Shown here: positions 18,918 through 64,000 of the stretch, one piece after another
How the letters are laid out: each line of letters starts with the position of its first letter
How positions within the stretch are numbered: position 1 is the stretch's first letter
IMG/VR virus record: IMGVR_UViG_3300009430_000004
Span: 154,089 to 218,088 of that record
Strand: one strand, 5' to 3'
DNA: 64,000 nucleotides
Translations under genes and position numbers: made by a program
The notes under the pieces: model-generated
The model's input: the letters and a program-made list of their open reading frames with translations, nothing else
Told to the model about the DNA's origin: nothing
Database searches by the model: none

Positions 18918-19029
18918 AAAAAATAATATGCGGGAGGTCTATCTATCCAGATATAACCTCCCTCTTCCTTAGGGTAATTGATAATTAGACTATATTTTTT
19001 AGTGTCTCAATTATCATTTATGTGTATAC
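18916..19029 (-). ncRNA. Candidate early small RNA (~110 nt)
   Basis: CGTA-N17-TATATATTAT-N6-GTA promoter, 12-bp hairpin, terminator with T-tract only on this strand, no RBS-led ORF. Confidence 0.5.
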
Positions 19030-19066
19030 ACAATTATAATATATATCTGTGTTGGACTACTTTACG
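19027..19066 (-). promoter_or_regulatory. CGTA-N17-TATATATTAT-N6-GTA promoter
   Basis: ATAATATATA 19036-45, TACG 19063-66. Confidence 0.7.
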
Positions 19067-19098
19067 GTTTTCCTAAATACAGAAAAAATAATTTAGAT

Positions 19099-19133
19099 TA
19101 TATATTATATGTAGGTATCAGAACAAATTTATA
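19099..19133 (+). promoter_or_regulatory. Early (19099) and late (19122) promoters in tandem
   Basis: TATATATTAT ATGTAG GTA; AACA AATTTA TA. Confidence 0.65.
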
Positions 19134-19150
19134 AGAAGGGATGGGTTTAT

Positions 19151-19312
19151 ATGGAACCACCAAAGGTTTTAGCAGACCTTATGAAACCTTTGACTCAAAG
19201 GAACATACAATTGGCGACAGAAACGCCAGAAGAAAAAATGCAACGAATAAAAGACCAATTTGGTCTTTACCATGGTCCTGGTAAAAGGAAGAAAAAGAAG
19301 AAGAAAAAATAA
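19151..19312 (+). CDS. 53-aa protein with poly-lysine tail (not in ORF track)
   Basis: MEPPKVL...GPGKRKKKKKKK; AAGAAGGG RBS; early and late promoters directly upstream. Confidence 0.65.
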   Translation: MEPPKVLADLMKPLTQRNIQLATETPEEKMQRIKDQFGLYHGPGKRKKKKKKK

Positions 19313-19334
19313 ATATAAAAGGAGGGTGGGTTAA

Positions 19335-20084: not shown

Positions 20085-20108
20085 ATCAGTAAATAAATAA
20101 TCAAAAAA

Positions 20109-20130
20109 ATAATTATATTATTAGGAGGTA
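20109..20130 (+). repeat. 22-bp shared leader, copy 1
   Basis: ATAATTATATTATTAGGAGGTA, identical at 34853 and 45321. Confidence 0.9.
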
Positions 20131-20137
20131 AACAATC

Positions 20138-20617
20138 ATGGCTAAAGGAAAAAGAAAATTCGTTGAGAAAATCGCTCGTATTAAGGAGCTTCAGAAAGAG
20201 GCTGAAAAGGAAAGAAGAAAGGCGATAATTGAGTGTGCTCACCAAAATGAAAAAGGCAAGCTCAAGATTCACCCAGTTAACGAAAAGGGTGATTATGAAT
20301 GTAAATACTGTGAAGAGCAGTTCAACATGAACTCCATCAGCAGAAGTAACATTGAGGACGCAATCGAAACAATGCACAATGCTATTCAGCAAATCAGATG
20401 TTTCTCTGATCCTGAGGACGATGCTAAGCTTGTAAGATTACTTGGCGAACTTGACTTCAACATGCAGGAAGTTGGCGAGCTCTATGAGAGAATCGTTAAC
20501 CTATACGGCAAGAACAAGAAGAAGAACAGGGGTGACAAGTACAAAGATCATGATAGCTTCGGTAGCTACGGTGCATCCTCATTAAGCTTCATTGGTGGCG
20601 GAAAGAAAAATAAATAG
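20138..20617 (+). CDS. Putative Zn-ribbon protein with basic termini
   Basis: CAH...CKYC motif; carries the 22-bp shared leader. Confidence 0.6.
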   Translation: MAKGKRKFVEKIARIKELQKEAEKERRKAIIECAHQNEKGKLKIHPVNEKGDYECKYCEEQFNMNSISRSNIEDAIETMHNAIQQIRCFSDPEDDAKLVRLLGELDFNMQEVGELYERIVNLYGKNKKKNRGDKYKDHDSFGSYGASSLSFIGGGKKNK

Positions 20618-33064: not shown

Positions 33065-33150
33065 GATTTAATTCCTCCCACAGAATCAAAATATTTTTCA
33101 CTAGCATCTATATTTACTAGCGGAACATACAAATATATTATCTACGTATG

Positions 33151-33190
33151 TACACAATAATAATATATATTCATCATGTTTTAATTTACG
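33151..33190 (-). promoter_or_regulatory. CGTA-N17-TATATATTAT-N6-GTA promoter
   Basis: ATAATATATA 33160-69, TACG 33187-90. Confidence 0.7.
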
Positions 33191-33206
33191 ATTTTAATAT
33201 TATAGG

Positions 33207-33218
33207 AACATAGAAATA
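33207..33218 (+). promoter_or_regulatory. Late promoter
   Basis: AACA TAGAAA TA. Confidence 0.65.
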
Positions 33219-33245
33219 ATCGAAAATAATTGTGAGGTGATTATA

Positions 33246-33413
33246 ATGAGTGACAAAGGAGAATTGCACATTGTAACAGAAGTTGGGACATTTGGCGATT
33301 TAAATATAACCGACCCAACAAAGAAAAAGGTGGCTAAAAAGGACGAAGATATGGATGCCCTTATAAGAGAAGCTCACCAGGAAAACATAAAAAATCTTGG
33401 ACAGAAAAAGTAA
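33246..33413 (+). CDS. 55-aa late protein (not in ORF track)
   Basis: MSDKGELHIVTEVG...; GAGGTG RBS; late promoter 33207 and terminator 33416. Confidence 0.65.
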   Translation: MSDKGELHIVTEVGTFGDLNITDPTKKKVAKKDEDMDALIREAHQENIKNLGQKK

Positions 33414-33415
33414 TT

Positions 33416-33448
33416 GGTATGGGAGTTAGTCTCCCATGCCTAATTTTT
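33416..33448 (+). terminator. Intrinsic terminator
   Basis: GGTATGGGAG / CTCCCATGCC. Confidence 0.65.
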
Positions 33449-33467
33449 ATCGTAAGGAGATGGTTAT

Positions 33468-33614
33468 ATGGAAATTCAAACAATTGGTAATGATGAGGTA
33501 AAAATAGAGCCTCTACCAATAGAAGTGATAGAACCAATCGAACCACCAGTAATTGATTGTTCTGCTGTATTTTCAGCATTAGGGGTTCCCCCTCATTTAC
33601 TAGGGGTTAAATAG
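33468..33614 (+). CDS. 48-aa peptide ending in portal-like motif (not in ORF track)
   Basis: MEIQ...CSAVFSALGVPPHLLGVK; AAGGAG RBS. Confidence 0.55.
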   Translation: MEIQTIGNDEVKIEPLPIEVIEPIEPPVIDCSAVFSALGVPPHLLGVK

Positions 33615-33635
33615 AAAGTTAATAGTTAAAATAAA

Positions 33636-33654
33636 TATATATTATCTTTCTGTA
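33636..33654 (+). promoter_or_regulatory. Early promoter (tubulin)
   Basis: TATATATTAT CTTTCT GTA. Confidence 0.65.
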
Positions 33655-33695
33655 ATCAAACATAAATAATCTAAATATAAAGGAGATGTATATCA

Positions 33696-34843: not shown

Positions 34844-34874
34844 AACAAAAAAATAATTATATTATTAGGAGGTA
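34844..34874 (+). promoter_or_regulatory. Late promoter fused to 22-bp shared leader, copy 2
   Basis: AACA AAAAAA TA then ATTATATTATTAGGAGGTA. Confidence 0.75.
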
Positions 34875-34881
34875 ACCTATT

Positions 34882-35745
34882 ATGAGTATTAAAGAATTTG
34901 TGAGAGACTGGAAACCAAAGAAAATGAGTAAAGATGACAGGACATACATGCTGTATGATAACATTCCTGCCATGGTAAGCTTCTATATTAAGAGGGGACA
35001 TGCTGACCAGGATACAGTAAATAAGCTGTTTGACAAAATGGAAGATCCAAAGTTCCCTAAGACATTACTTAGAATTTTAAAGACACAGGATGAAACTCCT
35101 GTTGAGCTTGGAATGGCTGTTGTTATTGCTGACTTCTTAGAAAGAAGGCATGCCAAAGTTGATGAAGAAACTCTTGGAATGTATGATGAATCTGTAACAA
35201 AGATTCTTAAGCCAAGAATGAAAAAGCTCAGCAAGAAGCTTGGTCTTGAAAAGGATATCCTTAAGGAGCTGCTGGTTGTAGTGCCTGATACTGATGTTAT
35301 GTCAGACAAGAAGTTCATCGGCATTTATGTAATGAAGATGCTTAGAAGACTTTATATCCTTGCAAAGGATACTGACCTTGGTCTGGAAGATGTTAAAACT
35401 GTTAAGAAGCTTTTCAAAGCTCTATTCGGCGATGACCAGATTGATAATATAGCTATCAATGTACTTCTTGAAAGAAAAGAAGGAATGAAGAATTTCGGCG
35501 ATAGACAACTTGCTGTTTGGAATCTTATGACTTCTTTCGCTCTTGAGACTTTAGAAGATCACAAGAAGAAAGAAATCAAAGAAATGCTTGAGCATTATAT
35601 CGGCAGAAGAGCTAAAGATGCTGAAAAAGGTAGGGACTTCGCTAGAAGAGTGCAGTTAAGCCAGGTTGCAGAGGATAATTATCCAAAGCTTGCTGCTGCT
35701 GTAGAAGACCTTTGCGAAAAGGACAAGAATAAGAAGTTCCTGTAA
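34882..35745 (+). CDS. Charged all-alpha protein of unknown function
   Basis: 287 aa; 22-bp shared leader; late promoter. Confidence 0.65.
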   Translation: MSIKEFVRDWKPKKMSKDDRTYMLYDNIPAMVSFYIKRGHADQDTVNKLFDKMEDPKFPKTLLRILKTQDETPVELGMAVVIADFLERRHAKVDEETLGMYDESVTKILKPRMKKLSKKLGLEKDILKELLVVVPDTDVMSDKKFIGIYVMKMLRRLYILAKDTDLGLEDVKTVKKLFKALFGDDQIDNIAINVLLERKEGMKNFGDRQLAVWNLMTSFALETLEDHKKKEIKEMLEHYIGRRAKDAEKGRDFARRVQLSQVAEDNYPKLAAAVEDLCEKDKNKKFL

Positions 35746-38183: not shown

Positions 38184-40496
38184 ATGAAAGGAGACAGGCA
38201 AATGTCAAATGTTCAACCGAAACCACAATTAAGAAAAGAAAAAGACTATATTAATACGACAACGATAAGGTTGAAAGAGACCTTATGTGAAAAAGAGGAA
38301 AAGTACCATTTTAAAGATGATATATTCGGTATGACATTACTAACGAACCCTGGATATATAAGTGCTTCAAGAAATATAATGTTTACATCACATTTGAGGC
38401 AGTTCGTTAACCTGTTGAACCCTGAGTTTCCAAAGGTGTTTACCAACTATGAAAATATAGTTGGTAAATACTCAACTGGATATTATAGGGCGAAAACAGA
38501 TTTAAAGGTAGTTGATAAAATAGCTAAGTTCGGCAACGGAGTATTGGACAATCATCTATATCTTCTATTCACATATGATGAAGAGAATGATAAATATGAT
38601 GTTATTCAGAAACGTATAGTTGAAGACTTAACAGAAAAGTTCGGGTTCCCTTACAATAATGAAGTAATGGATGCTAAGGAACCAGGAGATGAAGTAAGAG
38701 CAGGAGAGGTGTTATACAAGACACCGTCATATGATGAGGACATGAATTACTGTTATGGTAAGAATGTCAAGTTCATGTATCTGCTAGATAATGACACCAT
38801 AGAGGACGCAATAAAGTGTTCTAAGTCATTTGCAAAGTCTATGAAATCTAAGGAAGTAGAAACTGTTAAAGTGTCCCTAAATGATAACGATATATTCTGT
38901 AATTATTATGGGACAAACGAAGAGTACAAGTGCTTCCCAGATATTAATGAGTTTATAAAGGATAAGATAGTTTGTGTTAAACGAAGAATACACAACAATC
39001 AGCTTTTATATGATGTAAAGAAATCAAATCTAAGAAAAATCAATTTTATGTCAGACAGCCTATCATTCTGTGAAGGTAGAATTGTAGACATAAATATCTA
39101 TTCAAATAAACCAATAGAAGAGATAGAAGACAATAGCTTTAATAGGCAATTATTAAAATATATTAAAATGCAGAGAGAATTCTACATCAAGGTTTATGAG
39201 AGATGTAAAAAGATAATAGACTCTGGCTCAAAGTATTCCAGTGAAGTTAACTTCTACTATAAGAAAGCTAAGAACATTCTCGATGAAAAGTATAAATGGA
39301 AAGAAGAAGATAATTCAGTATTCAGTAATATGATTATTGAATTCTTAATCGAGAGAGATGTTGAACTTTCAGTGGGACAGAAGATTACAGGACGATATGG
39401 AAATAAGGGAGTAGTATCTGAAATACTTCCAGACGAGGAAATGCCGTTCTTGGAAACTGGGGAAAGAGTTGATATCATATTCAATACTCTCGGCGTTATA
39501 AACAGAACAAATTCATTCCAGTTAATGGAGCAGTCAATTAACTTTATTTGTAACAGAGTAAGGGAAAGACTGAAGATTATGAATGATTTGAAAGAGAAGG
39601 AAAAATTATTATTTAAGATAATTAATTACTTCAATGACAAGCAGGCTGATAGTCTGCATGATTACTATAAGAGATTGGCTAAAGTCGACAAAGAAGATTT
39701 CTTTGAAGATATTATAGAAAGAGGAATATTTGTTCATATCCCGCCACTATGGGAAGACAGGAGTCTATTCGATAGACTTAACGACATTTATAAAGAATTC
39801 ACATGGATTAAACCATATGATGTTTATGTCAATAGGTTTGGTAGAAAGATAAAGATGTTGAAACAGTTAATAGTCGGGGATATGTACGTTATAAAATTAA
39901 AACAAACATCAAAGAAAGGTTTCTCGGTAAGAGCAACAGGTTCTCTTAGTAAGAGAGGCGTTCCAGAGAAATCTAATAAGGCTAAAAATCATCAGGAGCT
40001 TTATTCAAGAACACCTATAAGAATAGGTATTGATGAAAATCTCAATACTGCAATTGGTGTTGAAACCGAAGAAATAGCTAAGATCCACTTATTCTATAGG
40101 TCATCAGTTATAGGAAGACGAGACCTAGGAGAAAGATTAACAACAAATATTAAGGAAGTAAAGGAATTTAAATATTCACCAGAGTTTAAGAATAGAAATG
40201 TTGAGATTCTTCAAGCTTATCTTAAAGCAATGGGTCTGAAAATAGACTTTGAAGAGGATAAGTATTTCATAGATATATTCCTAGGTAGTATGGAGGAATA
40301 TAATTATGGGGATAAAACCTTTATATGCACTAGGAGAGAGTTTGAAGATAGAAAAACTAGGATGGACGTTGAAACTGACTTCCGAGAAAAGAACTATTTC
40401 GTTGGCTCTAAGGCTGAATATGAGGAAGCTGTCGATAAAAGAGTCAATGATGTCAATTTAAGAAAGTCTAAGTATGTAATAGATGTAAAAATGTAA
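38184..40496 (+). CDS. RNA polymerase beta C-terminal half, probably non-virion RNAP
   Basis: TIEDAI, GQKITGRYGNKGVVS..LPDEEMP, VDIIFNTLGVINR, VGDMYVIKLK motifs; early motif upstream. Confidence 0.9.
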   Translation: MKGDRQMSNVQPKPQLRKEKDYINTTTIRLKETLCEKEEKYHFKDDIFGMTLLTNPGYISASRNIMFTSHLRQFVNLLNPEFPKVFTNYENIVGKYSTGYYRAKTDLKVVDKIAKFGNGVLDNHLYLLFTYDEENDKYDVIQKRIVEDLTEKFGFPYNNEVMDAKEPGDEVRAGEVLYKTPSYDEDMNYCYGKNVKFMYLLDNDTIEDAIKCSKSFAKSMKSKEVETVKVSLNDNDIFCNYYGTNEEYKCFPDINEFIKDKIVCVKRRIHNNQLLYDVKKSNLRKINFMSDSLSFCEGRIVDINIYSNKPIEEIEDNSFNRQLLKYIKMQREFYIKVYERCKKIIDSGSKYSSEVNFYYKKAKNILDEKYKWKEEDNSVFSNMIIEFLIERDVELSVGQKITGRYGNKGVVSEILPDEEMPFLETGERVDIIFNTLGVINRTNSFQLMEQSINFICNRVRERLKIMNDLKEKEKLLFKIINYFNDKQADSLHDYYKRLAKVDKEDFFEDIIERGIFVHIPPLWEDRSLFDRLNDIYKEFTWIKPYDVYVNRFGRKIKMLKQLIVGDMYVIKLKQTSKKGFSVRATGSLSKRGVPEKSNKAKNHQELYSRTPIRIGIDENLNTAIGVETEEIAKIHLFYRSSVIGRRDLGERLTTNIKEVKEFKYSPEFKNRNVEILQAYLKAMGLKIDFEEDKYFIDIFLGSMEEYNYGDKTFICTRREFEDRKTRMDVETDFREKNYFVGSKAEYEEAVDKRVNDVNLRKSKYVIDVKM

Positions 40497-45292: not shown

Positions 45293-45342
45293 AACATATC
45301 AATGAAGGCAAAAATAAATTATAATTATATTATTAGGAGGTA
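45293..45342 (+). promoter_or_regulatory. Late promoter plus 22-bp shared leader, copy 3
   Basis: AACA TATCAA TG; leader 45321-45342. Confidence 0.75.
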
Positions 45343-45349
45343 GACAATT

Positions 45350-45703
45350 ATGTCAAAGGAAAATGCAAGACTTATTGAAATCAGAGAAAATGAAAAGGAA
45401 ATAATGAAGGTAGCTGAGAAAGCTCAGAAGTACCTAGAAGAAGAAAATAACATAGTTATCACTCATCCAGCAGCAATCCCAACAATCGGATATGCTTTCT
45501 TACGTTGCCTGATAGAGCACCTCAATGAGAACAAATCAGTTGGAAACAACATTGAGATTAACGTAATGCAGCTTTTCGATATGGGTATCAGCTATAGAGA
45601 GAACGATGATGCAGAGAAAGAAGGAAACTTCGATCCATATCTTAGACCTGGTCAAGAGTTCAAGCTTCTTGTTAAGGATGATGGTGAGACTGAAGAGGAT
45701 TAA
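45350..45703 (+). CDS. Divergent HU/IHF-like DNA-binding protein
   Basis: Two helices, then I.V.QLF...ISYR, F.PGQEFKLLVK pattern; 22-bp shared leader. Confidence 0.6.
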   Translation: MSKENARLIEIRENEKEIMKVAEKAQKYLEEENNIVITHPAAIPTIGYAFLRCLIEHLNENKSVGNNIEINVMQLFDMGISYRENDDAEKEGNFDPYLRPGQEFKLLVKDDGETEED

Positions 45704-60046: not shown

Positions 60047-60114
60047 TATATATTATATAAGTGATAATAAATACCATACCAATGGTTTTTAATTTTATTC
60101 TCAACAAAAATATA
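60047..60114 (+). promoter_or_regulatory. Early (60047) and late (60103) promoters (DNA polymerase)
   Basis: TATATATTAT; AACA AAAATA TA. Confidence 0.65.
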
Positions 60115-61965: not shown

Positions 61966-62616
61966 ATGGAAGAAATATTATTTGACCTTACATCAAAGGA
62001 TGTAAAGAAATTAAATGAATTCAATCAGGTTGTTAAAAAGTATTTTAATAACTATTATTTATTTGAAGATGGAGTTGTTATAGGGGAAAGTATCCTAGAT
62101 AAGGGCTCGCACTGTTGTATCTCAACTATCATACCGATGGATAATATTCCTGAAGATTCAATTCCTTATTTTAACTCATCAGCCATATTTCAGTTGATTA
62201 AAGATAGGAAAAAGGAAATAAAAGCTGTAGTCATTAGCTATGGTAGAACATGCTTAAGACTTGCTGACGGTTTGGACTATACAATTGGTGGAATTATTAA
62301 AAAAGATGAGATTAAAAAAGAAATTAAAGATAGTTATGATTTAGCAAAAAGGATCATAGAAAAAACTGATAAAGAATCTGAGAAAATTGAGGATTCCACT
62401 ATCGACCAGTTAGTGGACAATGAAATTGTCACTTATGACAACGATGTTCATAAAGTAAGAATGACTAAAGAATTAATTCCTGCATTAAAGAAGGGATTGA
62501 ATGTTAATATTGCTTTTAATGACATAGAAGGTGATGAGACTAAATTTGAAACAATATTAATGACTGATAGGGAAGACATAAAAACTTATCATAAGTATAC
62601 TTGCATTAGATTCTAG
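61966..62616 (+). CDS. Hypothetical protein next to the polymerase gene
   Basis: 216 aa, AAGGAG RBS. Confidence 0.6.
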   Translation: MEEILFDLTSKDVKKLNEFNQVVKKYFNNYYLFEDGVVIGESILDKGSHCCISTIIPMDNIPEDSIPYFNSSAIFQLIKDRKKEIKAVVISYGRTCLRLADGLDYTIGGIIKKDEIKKEIKDSYDLAKRIIEKTDKESEKIEDSTIDQLVDNEIVTYDNDVHKVRMTKELIPALKKGLNVNIAFNDIEGDETKFETILMTDREDIKTYHKYTCIRF

Positions 62617-62645
62617 TGGCGATTTATCGCCACTTTATTTTTTTA
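62615..62645 (+). terminator. Intrinsic terminator
   Basis: AGTGGCGAT / ATCGCCACT. Confidence 0.65.
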
Positions 62646-62663
62646 TAGGAGGTAAAAAGATAG

Positions 62664-62942
62664 ATGTTTTTTAAGAAGTTAATGTCAATTAGTAAATTTA
62701 AATCCACTATAAAAGAAATAGAATCTGATAGATTCTTCTATTTTAAAGAAGAAATTATGAAGGAATTGATTCATAATAAGAAACTTGGCATTGTAAGTTT
62801 TAAAATTTACTTACCTAAGTTTATTCACGACAATCCAACCCTATATAAGGAATTTGAAGCATTCCTTAATAAGTTAGGTTATCAATTGGTTAAATATAAT
62901 ATCGGGGAATATATCGAAGAAGACCCTCGGTTAAGAAAATAA
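62664..62942 (+). CDS. Hypothetical protein
   Basis: 92 aa, AGGAGG RBS. Confidence 0.6.
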   Translation: MFFKKLMSISKFKSTIKEIESDRFFYFKEEIMKELIHNKKLGIVSFKIYLPKFIHDNPTLYKEFEAFLNKLGYQLVKYNIGEYIEEDPRLRK

Positions 62943-62946
62943 TTTT

Positions 62947-62958
62947 AACATAATTATA
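62947..62958 (+). promoter_or_regulatory. Late promoter
   Basis: AACA TAATTA TA. Confidence 0.65.
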
Positions 62959-62979
62959 AAAAAGAGGAGGGGATCGAGT

Positions 62980-63141
62980 ATGGGAGAAAAATATCCTGAA
63001 TGTCCGTATGCATTACAGTGTTGCTGTCATGTTGAAGGTTCTAATACTAAGCCCTGCGTGAGAAAAGAACAAGACAAAGCGGCTGGTAAGCCGAATTCAT
63101 TCGAACCTAAGTTCTGCACATATTCAATGAATCCCCCATAA
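62980..63141 (+). CDS. 53-aa Cys-rich late peptide (not in ORF track)
   Basis: MGEKYPECPYALQCCCHVEG..PC..FCTY; GAGGAGGGG RBS; own promoter and terminator. Confidence 0.7.
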   Translation: MGEKYPECPYALQCCCHVEGSNTKPCVRKEQDKAAGKPNSFEPKFCTYSMNPP

Positions 63142-63172
63142 GGTTTTTAACCTTATGGGTTATTTCATTTTT
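63128..63172 (+). terminator. Intrinsic terminator
   Basis: CCCATAAGG / CCTTATGGG. Confidence 0.65.
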
Positions 63173-63173
63173 A

Positions 63174-63199
63174 AACAATATATTGTGAACACAATAATA
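63174..63199 (+). promoter_or_regulatory. Two tandem late promoters for the ncRNA candidate
   Basis: AACA ATATAT TG and AACA CAATAA TA. Confidence 0.65.
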
Positions 63200-63378
63200 A
63201 GTCGGGGGATTAATATAGATTTTTAGAATTTTCCACAAATAAACCTCCTTAAAGCGTTTTGTTAATTAGTGTTTTAAAAGGCCCTTAAAATTGGTGAAAA
63301 ACTATCAATTCCTCCGACTTATTATTAACATAAAAAATAACCTATGTGTACATGAGTGTGCATATAGGTTATTTTTTT
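63185..63378 (+). ncRNA. Candidate late structured RNA (~180-190 nt) with anti-SD motif
   Basis: Two tandem AACA-N6-TR promoters, closing stem with G-U pair, own terminator, no ORF. Confidence 0.6.
63332..63378. terminator. Bidirectional terminator ending the ncRNA candidate
   Basis: AAAAAATAACCTATGTG / CATATAGGTTATTTTTT. Confidence 0.75.
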
Positions 63379-63411
63379 ATCCTTTATTTTGTAGTTATTA
63401 AAATTATCGGG

Positions 63412-63423
63412 AACAAAAATATA
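63412..63423 (+). promoter_or_regulatory. Late promoter (portal)
   Basis: AACA AAAATA TA. Confidence 0.7.
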
Positions 63424-63454: not shown

Positions 63455-64000
63455 ATGGCAAAGAAAGATGAAAAAAAGAATGGTGTATCTATCAAGAAAG
63501 TAGAAAAACCTTTGATTAAATTAAACTCCTTGTTTAACGATATCATTGACAATATTTCATACAATACATCTAAATCAGACAATCGAAGAGAAAAAGAGCT
63601 GAAGAAGTTATCGGATGAAATAGATGATATAGTATTCCAGGAGATTAAATCACTTACTACTTTCACAGGGGATGATATATCAACTTTCTTAGTTAAACTA
63701 TTTAATGATTATGACAATCAACAGCAAACGGCGGTTAAGGGTATAGAAGATATATTTGCATCGGAAACAAACGGCATATTCCAATTCTTTCAGGAGAGAT
63801 ATAAGAATCTTAATCTTCTCTATGATGATTTGAATATGATTTGTAGCCAATTATATGAGTTGCAAGAAGCTATTGCCGCTACAAGAGATGCTATCGTCAC
63901 TTCTGACGATTTATCTCAAACGGTTTCAAGAACTCTTAAGTTCAAGAACTCAAATGAGAAAGAAAAAGCCCATATTGCTCTTATCGAGAATATGGAGAAG
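63455..64000 (+). CDS. Portal protein, N-terminal part (runs off right edge)
   Basis: Manual translation; LYDDLNMICSQLYELQEAIAATRDAIVTSDD resembles T4 gp20/phiKZ-type portal N-terminal motif; late promoter 63412. Confidence 0.6.
   Translation, partial: MAKKDEKKNGVSIKKVEKPLIKLNSLFNDIIDNISYNTSKSDNRREKELKKLSDEIDDIVFQEIKSLTTFTGDDISTFLVKLFNDYDNQQQTAVKGIEDIFASETNGIFQFFQERYKNLNLLYDDLNMICSQLYELQEAIAATRDAIVTSDDLSQTVSRTLKFKNSNEKEKAHIALIENMEK

What the first reader, a model, noticed from the sequence alone, without database searches (positions are those of the whole stretch)
63174..63378. Late, self-contained ~180-nt rod-like RNA with an anti-Shine-Dalgarno sequence, upstream of the portal gene
Seen: terminator (63128-72), two tandem AACA-N6-TR promoters (+1 predicted at 63185 or 63199), ~130 nt with no ORF, then a strong terminator (63332-78) and a separate portal promoter. 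AAGUCGGGGGA (63199-209) pairs with UCCUCCGACUU (63310-320) in 11 bp, 17 bp from the upstream start. One pair is G-U, which would be an A-C mismatch on the other strand and so favours a plus-strand RNA. An inner stem UAAAGCG/UGUUUUA also forms. ACCUCCUUA (63243-51) mimics the 16S rRNA 3' end and is complementary to the AGGAGG RBSs used by this phage. Inference: a phage sRNA that sequesters RBSs, or a 6S-like RNAP decoy acting late.
Basis: partly seen in the sequence, partly recalled or inferred. Interest (0 to 1): 0.85.

Follow-up and report, generated by a model that had tools for sequence, protein, structure and literature searches.

The report
Candidate small RNA before portal gene
A short stretch with no gene, just before the portal gene of an uncultured AR9-like giant phage, looks like a real small RNA gene with its own promoter and terminator; two related phages have the same layout, but what the RNA does is still a guess.

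Summary
AACA-N6-TG (63174-63185) and AACA-N6-TA (63188-63199) match the published AR9 late-promoter consensus. That motif is strongly enriched in the window's intergenic DNA. An 11/17-bp helix closes about 100 nt of ORF-free sequence, followed by a strong terminator. The downstream gene is the portal.

"Rod-like" is overstated. The interior folds no better than shuffles, and the inverted repeat alone could be chance (about 0.15 expected per window).

The decisive evidence is comparative. Two relatives (portal 65-68% identical) have the same unit at the same place: the same promoter, with +1 zero to two nt before a 5'-3' closing helix of unrelated sequence, then 85-100 ORF-free nt and a terminator. 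End-pairing p is 0.001-0.004 per locus. G-U pairs and folding energies favour the plus strand.

ACCUCCU recurs in one relative, in a hairpin loop. The other has only CCUCU.

The unit always follows a small-protein gene of one family. It is absent from about 40 other relatives, so it is accessory. There is no Rfam match, no other copy and no formal covariation.

Verdict: probable new phage small RNA (about 0.7). Anti-SD pairing is plausible (about 0.3). A 6S-like role is unsupported.

The parts
62664..62942 (+). 92-aa protein gene. It is the cassette partner that accompanies the ORF-less unit in all three phages that have the unit.
   Evidence: Homologs (24-28% identity) lie directly upstream of the unit in L075 (90 aa) and L073 (135 aa, with an added N-terminal hydrophobic segment). 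No family, PADLOC or PDB-fold match. AlphaFold model pLDDT 84.7.
62947..63141 (+). AACAtaattaTA promoter plus a 53-aa Cys-rich ORFan. This segment is an insert specific to this phage, lying between the 92-aa gene and the unit.
   Evidence: No homolog among 5.8 billion proteins. The identical promoter sequence AACATAATTATAAA drives the ORF-less unit directly in L075.
63135..63172 (+). Intrinsic terminator that ends the 53-aa gene's transcript and isolates the unit.
   Evidence: 11-bp stem plus T-run. The hairpin is 18/19 identical to the terminator in front of the L073 unit.
63174..63185 (+). Distal AR9-type late promoter AACA-N6-TG, predicted +1 = G63185.
   Evidence: Motif match. Consensus and TSS rule from PMC5312081 and PMC7598289. 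The TG variant is less enriched than TA.
63188..63199 (+). Proximal AR9-type late promoter AACA-N6-TA, predicted +1 = A63199, which is the first base of the closing helix.
   Evidence: The same arrangement (+1 zero to two nt before the helix) is found in L073 and L075.
63193..63209 (+). 5' arm of the closing helix (11 bp from 63199; 17 bp from 63193).
   Evidence: End-pairing energy is -19.0 kcal/mol, p=0.001 against 2000 dinucleotide shuffles, and 0.0007 of genomic windows reach it.
63243..63251 (+). ACCUCCUUA, complementary to the AGGAGG-type ribosome-binding sites.
   Evidence: Read directly from the sequence. Mean unpaired probability 0.51. ACCUCCU recurs in L073 in a hairpin loop. The background rate of ACCTCCT is 0.006 per 100 nt.
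63249..63277 (+). Inner hairpin UUAAAGCGUU / AGUGUUUUAA, present in the MFE structure only.
   Evidence: Not significant: the interior has z +0.9.
63310..63326 (+). 3' arm of the closing helix. It holds a second CCUCC, which is paired.
63332..63378 (+). Strong intrinsic terminator (20 pairs plus a U-run), the predicted 3' end of the RNA. It also looks terminator-like on the minus strand.
   Evidence: AR9 RNA-seq shows strong termination at predicted terminators (PMC5312081).
63391..63423 (+). Conserved GTAGTTATTAAAATTAT followed by the portal gene's own promoter AACAaaaataTA (+1 = 63423).
   Evidence: The 17-mer is identical in L073. The portal promoter is conserved in L003, L073, L074, L075, L077-L079.
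63455..64000 (+). 5' part of the portal gene (740 aa in full; it continues at contig position 1).
   Evidence: tblastn hits to the AR9/PBS1 portal vertex protein, E 1e-44. phrog_3004. Synteny with AR9 g132-g126.

Best explanation
The segment 63185/63199-63378 is a stand-alone gene for a non-coding RNA of about 180 nt on the plus strand.

The phage's AR9-type non-virion RNA polymerase would start at an AACA-N6-T-A/G promoter. The first transcribed bases form the 5' arm of a helix that closes on a 3' arm 100 nt downstream. About 12 nt later a strong intrinsic terminator ends the transcript and caps its 3' end.

The RNA belongs to an accessory cassette together with a ~90-aa protein gene. The cassette sits in a variable hotspot between the DNA-polymerase cluster and the portal gene.

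The most likely mode of action is base pairing. A CU-rich stretch identical to 8 nt of the 16S rRNA 3' tail (ACCUCCUU) lies in the weakly structured interior. It would pair with AGGAGG-type ribosome-binding sites of phage or host mRNAs, possibly including the cassette's own gene, and lower their translation. C-rich loops of Firmicute sRNAs such as RoxS work this way.

Shown: the sequence anatomy, the promoter motif's enrichment, and recurrence of the architecture in two relatives. Inferred: transcription, timing, targets and effect.

My confidence splits as about 0.7 that it is a real small RNA gene and about 0.3 that it works through anti-SD pairing.
For: **Promoter.**
- AACA-N6-TA is 26/68 intergenic against 12% expected, and typically lies 21-57 nt before start codons.
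- The consensus and TSS rule come from AR9 dRNA-seq (PMC5312081; PMC7598289).
- The phage RNAP beta subunit and the portal are closest to AR9/PBS1.

**Same unit in relatives fetched only through the portal protein.**
- L073: AACAttatagTA, a 10-bp helix UGGUAAUAUG/CAUAUUACCA, then a terminator.
- L075: AACAtaattaTA, an 8-bp helix AUAACGGG/CUCGUUAU plus GCGG/CCGU, then a terminator.

**End pairing** (first 25 nt against last 25 nt).
- Against shuffles, p = 0.001, 0.004 and 0.002; Fisher combined 1.5e-6.
- Against real genomic windows, the fractions are 0.0007, 0.006 and 0.010.

**Strand.**
- Helices contain G-U pairs in the plus sense.
- Plus-strand domain energies beat minus-strand ones in L073 (-21.4 vs -17.3) and L075 (-19.9 vs -11.2). 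They tie in the window.

**No coding alternative.** No conserved ORF exists on either strand.

**Anti-SD.**
- ACCUCCU is shared by the window and L073 against a background of 0.006 per 100 nt.
- Its unpaired probability is 0.99 in L073.

**Linkage.** The unit always follows the 92-aa-family gene.

**Known parallel.** RoxS C-rich regions bind SD sequences and block translation initiation (PMC5419742).
Against: - No transcript data exist; the phage is known only from metagenomes.
- There are only three orthologs. Their interiors are not significantly similar (p 0.12, 0.88, 0.14) and MAFFT cannot align them, so no formal covariation statistic was possible.
- The anti-SD is degenerate in L075 (CCUCU) and half-paired in the window.
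- The interior has no significant structure.
- The unit is absent from about 40 relatives, so it is dispensable.
- Seven to nine nt of anti-SD complementarity would fit nearly every mRNA and predicts no specific target.
Confidence: 0.4

Rival explanations
1. It is a real structured small RNA, but it acts by binding a protein rather than by pairing with ribosome-binding sites. It could be a decoy or sponge for an RNase, an RNA chaperone, a host defence sensor, the cassette's own ~90-aa protein or, least likely, RNA polymerase (6S-like). On this reading the anti-SD motif is incidental.
For: The only feature conserved in all three orthologs is the closing helix that starts at +1, together with the terminator, not the CU-rich motif. 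The unit is strictly linked to one small-protein family. Accessory hotspots in phages commonly hold counter-defence functions (general knowledge).
Against: No fold resemblance of the 92-aa protein to RNA-binding proteins. No Rfam 6S, Y RNA or pRNA match. No rod or central bubble. ACCUCCU recurs in L073 at p of about 0.01.
Confidence: 0.2
2. It is a non-functional remnant. An accessory gene of the hotspot decayed or was deleted and left its promoter, a scrap of sequence and its terminator. The inverted repeat is chance or a recombination scar.
For: The locus is a gain-and-loss hotspot. The inverted repeat in the window alone is expected about 0.15 times per window. The interior is unstructured and unconserved.
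Against: In three lineages with 32-35% portal divergence (68% and 66% identity to the window's portal), each keeps an ORF-free unit of 100-120 nt, a promoter placed zero to two nt before a significant end-to-end helix of a different sequence, and a terminator. Neutral decay would not preserve this.
Confidence: 0.12
3. It is a cis-acting element, not a trans-acting RNA. It could be a 3' UTR or stability element of the upstream cassette gene, or a transcriptional insulator that shields the portal promoter from read-through.
For: In L075 there is no terminator between the 90-aa gene and the unit, so the unit would also be that gene's 3' UTR. The unit ends in an unusually strong, bidirectional-looking terminator just before the conserved portal promoter.
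Against: The window and L073 have a terminator upstream of the unit and a dedicated promoter for it. Relatives without the unit manage with a single terminator before the same portal promoter. An insulator needs neither a promoter nor a closing helix.
Confidence: 0.1
4. The signal belongs to the minus strand. AAGGAGGT (reverse complement of 63243-63250) would be the ribosome-binding site of a small minus-strand ORF: GTG with 8 codons, or TTG 63238 with 43 aa.
For: SD-to-start spacing is good in the window (7 nt to GTG) and in L073 (6 nt to ATG). AACA-N6-TT lies 27 nt upstream of the GTG on the minus strand.
Against: The ORFs are 8 or 43 codons in the window, 3 in L073 and none in L075, and they are not conserved. 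The TT variant of the promoter motif accounts for only about 6 of about 129 hits in intergenic DNA, that is, depleted. L073 has no minus-strand promoter motif. The 43-aa ORF has no Pfam hit (the only library it was searched against). G-U pairs and energies favour the plus strand.
Confidence: 0.03
5. It is a DNA-level element: a miniature inverted-repeat transposable element or another element bounded by terminal inverted repeats.
For: 17-bp inverted repeats (16/17) flank 100 AT-rich bp.
Against: It is single-copy in the window. No other copy exists in IMG/VR or the JGI metagenome collection: all 52 plus 1 pattern hits are unrelated repeat families or chance. There is no clear target-site duplication. 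The orthologous units have different arm sequences, whereas transposase-recognised ends would be conserved.
Confidence: 0.02

Closest known systems
Firmicute trans-acting sRNAs with C-rich seed regions (RoxS/RsaE type)
   Same: Own promoter, no ORF, intrinsic terminator, size of 100-200 nt, and an exposed C/U-rich motif complementary to the Shine-Dalgarno sequence. [quoted passage not shown]
   Different: No sequence or covariance-model match to RsaE/RoxS or any Rfam family. It has one CCUCC-type motif rather than several CCC(C) regions. It is phage-encoded and read by a phage RNA polymerase promoter. The 5'-3' closing helix is not a feature of RoxS. Targets are unknown.
Phage-encoded small non-coding RNAs reported from transcriptomes of jumbo and other virulent phages (for example the four ncRNAs annotated in Pseudomonas phage PA5oct, PMC7318152 abstract)
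   Same: Short ORF-free transcription units inside a large virulent phage genome.
   Different: Those come from Pseudomonas phages and are supported by transcript data. This one has no transcript data, comes from an AR9/PBS1-like phage, and shows no sequence relationship to them. The AR9 transcriptome paper reports antisense transcripts but, by term search, no intergenic ncRNA (PMC5312081).
6S RNA
   Same: About 180 nt, with paired 5' and 3' ends, and proposed to act late.
   Different: No extended rod with a central bubble (interior z of about 0). No hit to the Rfam 6S models. RNA polymerase binding is untested.
phi29-family packaging RNA (pRNA)
   Same: A phage RNA of about 120-170 nt whose 5' and 3' ends pair. 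Little sequence but similar structure among relatives (my own knowledge). The unit lies next to the portal gene.
   Different: No Rfam pRNA hit. It is absent from most relatives with the same portal, so it cannot be an essential packaging component. The phage family and packaging machinery are different.

Membership tests
AR9-type non-virion RNAP (late) promoter | AACA-(6N)-T-A/G, with the last base as the TSS | tested here: met
   63174-63185 (TG) and 63188-63199 (TA). Consensus from PMC5312081 and PMC7598289.
AR9-type non-virion RNAP (late) promoter | The motif is used genome-wide upstream of genes in this phage | tested here: met
   26 of 68 AACA-N6-TA hits lie in the 12% intergenic DNA, mostly 21-57 nt before same-strand starts.
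AR9-type non-virion RNAP (late) promoter | The phage encodes AR9-like multisubunit RNAP | tested here: met
   38184-40496 matches phrog_3295 and the AR9/PBS1 RNAP beta subunit at 37% identity, E 2e-110. Uracil DNA and real TSS usage cannot be tested here.
Stand-alone bacterial/phage sRNA gene | Own promoter and intrinsic terminator bounding an ORF-free stretch | tested here: met
Stand-alone bacterial/phage sRNA gene | Structure conserved in orthologs despite sequence change | tested here: met
   The closing helix is present in 3 of 3 units with unrelated sequences; p 0.001-0.004 each. With only three sequences and no alignable columns, there is no R-scape-type statistic.
Stand-alone bacterial/phage sRNA gene | A discrete transcript is detected | not testable with these tools
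   No transcriptome is available for this uncultured phage.
Anti-SD (C-rich seed) translational repressor sRNA | Single-stranded C/U-rich motif complementary to SD, conserved among orthologs | tested here: inconclusive
   ACCUCCU is in the window (unpaired 0.51) and in L073 (0.99, hairpin loop). L075 has only CCUCU (0.77).
Anti-SD (C-rich seed) translational repressor sRNA | An identified target with extended complementarity | tested here: inconclusive
   Duplex scans against 69 translation-initiation regions give generic SD pairing (median -8.7 kcal/mol for the 9-mer) and no clear specific target.
6S RNA | Match to the Rfam 6S covariance models | tested here: not met
   No hit at gathering score, or at E up to 10 in the region.
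6S RNA | Long irregular rod with a large central bubble | tested here: not met
   Only the closing helix is significant. The interior has z +0.9 and 0.0.
6S RNA | Binds RNAP holoenzyme and templates pRNA | not testable with these tools
   Needs biochemistry.
MITE / TIR-bounded mobile element | Multiple copies with the same terminal inverted repeats | tested here: not met
   Single copy in the window, in IMG/VR and in the metagenome collection.
MITE / TIR-bounded mobile element | Target-site duplication | tested here: not met
   The flanks GAACAC / AACATA give no clean duplication.
phi29-type pRNA | Rfam pRNA model match, and presence in all relatives that share the packaging machinery | tested here: not met
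   No Rfam hit. The unit is absent from about 40 portal relatives.

The most novel reading that the evidence does not exclude
A jumbo phage makes, from a late promoter, an abundant and stable RNA that carries a copy of the 16S rRNA 3' tail (ACCUCCUU). The RNA would titrate Shine-Dalgarno sequences in trans. That would be an RNA-based, sequence-generic way to re-programme translation late in infection, for example by damping strongly SD-dependent host or early-phage mRNAs, or by working with its partner ~90-aa protein.
Probability: 0.08. Interest if true: 0.8.

Novelty: new member of a known kind. Interest (0 to 1): 0.5.

Why it matters
Small RNAs encoded by virulent phages are few, and none is described for the AR9/PBS1 group of uracil-DNA jumbo phages; the AR9 transcriptome paper mentions only antisense transcripts. 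If real, this would be a non-coding gene read by a non-canonical phage RNA polymerase from a promoter whose start site can be predicted to the base. That precision makes it an unusually clean candidate to test.

Its strict pairing with one small-protein family in a gain-and-loss hotspot hints at an RNA-protein accessory module, perhaps involved in host takeover or counter-defence. The anti-SD idea gives a direct, falsifiable mechanism.

The limits are that it is dispensable, rare (3 of about 45 relatives) and so far purely computational.

Tried and rejected
- **Rfam.** Searched at gathering score on the whole window and at E up to 10 on the region and on both orthologs. Only hairpin-like miRNA noise came back.
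- **tRNA/tmRNA.** None.
- **Nucleotide and protein searches of isolate phages with the region and the N-terminal 182 aa.** Nothing. Only the full-length portal found AR9/PBS1.
- **Homologs of the 53-aa and 92-aa ORFs by word-indexed search.** Only self hits. The 92-aa family was found only by synteny.
- **The 92-aa family alignment against other collections.** Nothing new in IMG/VR or in the GTDB genomes.
- **Inverted-repeat pattern scans of IMG/VR and the metagenome collection.** All hits were unrelated or chance.
- **17-mer GTAGTTATTAAAATTAT in IMG/VR.** Only chance AT-rich hits.
- **Portal alignment against GTDB genomes.** Nothing, so no host was identified.
- **MAFFT alignment of the three units.** The ends did not align, so RNAalifold, the count of structure pairs and a covariance model were not attempted.
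- **Local alignment of the interiors.** Not significant.
- **Target prediction with RNAduplex.** Uninformative.
- **Structure of the 92-aa protein.** The model is confident but has no significant PDB neighbour.
- **Other long intergenic gaps of the window (18918-19334, 33065-33695).** They hold small ORFs with ribosome-binding sites, not further ORF-free units.
- **Two look-ups hit short contigs without upstream sequence**.

Full report
**What the window is**

The window is the last 64 kb of a circularly permuted 218-kb metagenomic contig, IMG/VR 3300009430_000004, which is the same as Ga0114938_1000007. An identical copy of the region lies in a second sample (0 differences over 6.5 kb).

It is a 33% GC jumbo phage. 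It carries a phage multisubunit RNAP beta subunit (38184-40496), gyrase, ligase, DnaB and a family-B DNA polymerase.

The RNAP subunit and the gene downstream of the finding are closest to Bacillus phages AR9/PBS1. The RNAP beta subunit is 37% identical (E 2e-110). The portal vertex protein is 26% identical (E 1e-44). The gene order DNA polymerase, small genes, portal, tail tube, sheath matches AR9 g132-g126.

**Checking the observation**

All listed features are at the stated coordinates:

- Plus-strand terminators lie at 62615-62634, 63135-63159 and 63332-63377.
- AACAatatatTG is at 63174-63185 and AACAcaataaTA at 63188-63199.
- There is no ORF with a ribosome-binding site between them and the terminator.
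- The 11-bp helix (17 bp from 63193) joins 63199-63209 to 63310-63320 with one G-U.
- ACCUCCUUA is at 63243-63251.
- A separate portal promoter, AACAaaaataTA, is at 63412-63423.

The promoter reading is well founded. AR9 dRNA-seq defined late promoters as AACA-(6N)-TA/G, with the last base as the start site (PMC5312081; PMC7598289). In this window 26 of 68 AACA-N6-TA matches fall in the 12% of sequence that is intergenic, mostly 21-57 nt before a same-strand start codon. Shifted or altered control motifs show no such excess.

Two cautions apply:

1. The RNA is not rod-like. The 100 nt between the arms fold no better than shuffles (z +0.9 and 0.0), and the closed domain has the same energy on both strands here (-33.0).
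2. An inverted repeat of this quality with a 20-300 nt loop is expected about 0.15 times per window by chance. On this window alone the structure argument is weak.

**Relatives**

The two ORFs between the 216-aa gene and the unit had no word-sharing homologs among 5.8 billion proteins. The closest IMG/VR relatives go straight from the 216-aa gene's terminator to the portal promoter (L003, L006). So the whole of 62617-63400 is an insertion.

I fetched further relatives through portal homologs. The space before the portal turned out to be a hotspot:

- Most relatives have nothing there.
- Several have DUF1653 or other small genes.
- Two, L073 (68% portal identity) and L075 (66%), carry a homolog of the window's 92-aa gene (24-28% identity), followed by an ORF-free unit with the same anatomy as the finding.

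In the portal tree these three belong to one clade (support 93/94) with two members that lack the cassette.

**Architecture of the three units**

Each unit has an AACA-N6-TA promoter whose predicted +1 lies zero to two nt before the first base of a helix. That helix closes on a 3' arm 85-100 nt downstream. Six to twelve nt after the 3' arm comes a strong terminator, then the conserved portal promoter.

| Locus | Helix | Length |
|---|---|---|
| window | AAGUCGGGGGA / UCCUCCGACUU | 11 bp |
| L073 | UGGUAAUAUG / CAUAUUACCA | 10 bp |
| L075 | AUAACGGG / CUCGUUAU, plus GCGG / CCGU | 8 bp + 4 bp |

The three helix sequences are unrelated.

I tested pairing between the first and last 25 nt of each pre-terminator RNA:

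| Locus | Energy (kcal/mol) | p vs 2000 dinucleotide shuffles | Fraction of real genomic windows of equal length |
|---|---|---|---|
| window | -19.0 | 0.001 | 0.0007 |
| L073 | -14.4 | 0.004 | 0.006 |
| L075 | -13.6 | 0.002 | 0.010 |

The Fisher combined p against shuffles is 1.5e-6; the genomic-window fractions are. L073 and L075 were not chosen for this property, so they are a fair replication.

A motif with a density of about 5e-4 per position sits at the base of the helix in all three loci. That is also far from chance.

Homology of the window and L073 units is supported by their flanks. The upstream terminator hairpin is 18/19 identical, and GTAGTTATTAAAATTAT is identical after the unit's terminator. 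The interiors have diverged beyond significant similarity.

**Strand**

Helices contain G-U pairs in the plus sense. These would be A-C mismatches on the other strand. Domain-only energies favour plus in L073 (-21.4 vs -17.3) and L075 (-19.9 vs -11.2) and tie in the window. With terminators included, all three favour plus. Promoters and unidirectional upstream terminators agree with this.

**The anti-SD motif**

ACCUCCU is in the window (ACCUCCUU) and in L073 (CACCUCCU). By my own knowledge of the Bacillus 16S 3' end, each matches 8 nt of that tail.

The background for ACCTCCT on this strand in these phages is 0.006 per 100 nt, so its recurrence in one of two orthologs has p of about 0.01.

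- In L073 it forms the 10-nt loop of a hairpin (unpaired probability 0.99).
- In the window it is about half paired (0.51).
- L075 has only CCUCU next to a hairpin (0.77).

The minus-strand reading, that the motif is the SD of a small ORF, fails. The ORFs are 8 or 43, 3 and 0 codons and are not conserved. The only minus-strand promoter-like motif is the TT variant, which is depleted in intergenic DNA.

**What it is not**

- No Rfam family matches at gathering score. Hits at E up to 10 are hairpin noise and differ between the three loci.
- It is not a tRNA or tmRNA.
- It is not a repeated or mobile element. It is single-copy in the window. Pattern scans of IMG/VR and the metagenome collection returned only unrelated inverted-repeat families or chance hits. 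The orthologs have different arms.
- It is not 6S-like in shape.
- It is not a phi29-type pRNA. There is no model hit, and it is absent from most phages with the same portal.

**Best explanation**

It is a small non-coding RNA gene, about 180 nt from 63199 or about 195 nt from 63185. It would be transcribed by the phage's AR9-type polymerase and closed by a 5'-3' helix and a terminator hairpin, features that would make the RNA stable. It forms an accessory cassette with a ~90-aa protein of unknown fold class (model pLDDT 84.7, no significant PDB neighbour).

I put about 0.7 on this. For mechanism, the best-supported idea is pairing of the exposed CU-rich stretch with AGGAGG-type ribosome-binding sites. 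RoxS-type Firmicute sRNAs work this way (PMC5419742). I put about 0.3 on it, because the motif is not kept in L075 and no specific target emerges. A protein-binding role (about 0.2), a decayed remnant (about 0.12) and a purely cis role (about 0.1) remain open.

'Late' is an inference from AR9. The same motif here also precedes the DNA polymerase gene (promoter at 60103) and, in its TG variant, the gyrase B (20767) and ligase (43161) genes. AR9 has a class of continuously expressed genes (PMC7598289).

**Novelty and verdict**

This is a new candidate family within a known kind, phage-encoded small RNAs. It is not in Rfam and is not described for AR9-like phages. By term search, the AR9 transcriptome paper mentions only antisense RNAs.

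The 6S idea is not supported.

The evidence is limited to three orthologs with no alignable covariation and no transcript data. The element is dispensable and rare. Interest is moderate.

Noticed in passing
window 62617-63400; L073-L082, L088-L118 upstream of the portal gene: The gap between the 216-aa gene and the portal gene is a gain-and-loss hotspot. It is empty in most relatives, holds DUF1653 or other small genes in several, and holds the 92-aa-family gene plus the ORF-free unit in three.
   Followed up: partly
L101 1517-1776: A more distant relative (50% portal identity) has a different ORF-free stretch of about 150 nt between two terminators at the same locus. It is preceded by an early-type TATATATTATTAAT motif instead of AACA-N6-TA and may be another non-coding unit.
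   Followed up: no
window 15807, 19012, 20048, 29578, 33136, 42409, 57847 (repeat families D2, D6, D7, D15): A recurrent AT-rich motif (…ATAATATATAT… / TTATATATTATTAT…) in intergenic regions. It resembles the AT-rich early (virion RNAP) promoter class described for AR9-like phages.
   Followed up: no
window 20104-20140, 34848-34884, 45316-45352: A conserved leader AATAATTATATTATTAGGAGGTA lies directly before three start codons (family D1).
   Followed up: no
window 62980-63141: A 53-aa Cys-rich ORFan with its own AACA-N6-TA promoter and a strong ribosome-binding site. It has no homolog in any collection searched. It is inserted between the 92-aa gene and the unit only in this phage.
   Followed up: partly
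L098-L100, L105-L107 (portal genes of IMG/VR relatives): In L098, L099, L106 and L107 the portal match spans 2.5-2.8 kb; in L100 and L105 it covers only residues 6-594 (about 1.8 kb). In all six the longest portal ORF is about 580-600 aa. This suggests an interruption of the portal gene in those lineages (an intron, a homing-endonuclease insertion or a frameshift).
   Followed up: no
window 63391-63407 and L073 2939-2955: GTAGTTATTAAAATTAT, just upstream of the portal promoter, is identical in the window and L073 although the adjacent unit has diverged completely. It may be a regulatory site for the portal promoter.
   Followed up: no
L073 2329-2736: The L073 member of the 92-aa family carries an extra hydrophobic N-terminal segment of about 40 aa, probably membrane-spanning, that the window and L075 versions lack.
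   Followed up: no
metagenome loci L024-L072 (Ga0180434 contigs): The inverted-repeat pattern scan turned up by accident an abundant element of about 127 nt, bounded by inverted repeats (AAGTCGGCGGAATAGGGGGGG…). It occurs on many high-GC contigs of one metagenome and is probably a MITE-like repeat of an unrelated organism.
   Followed up: no
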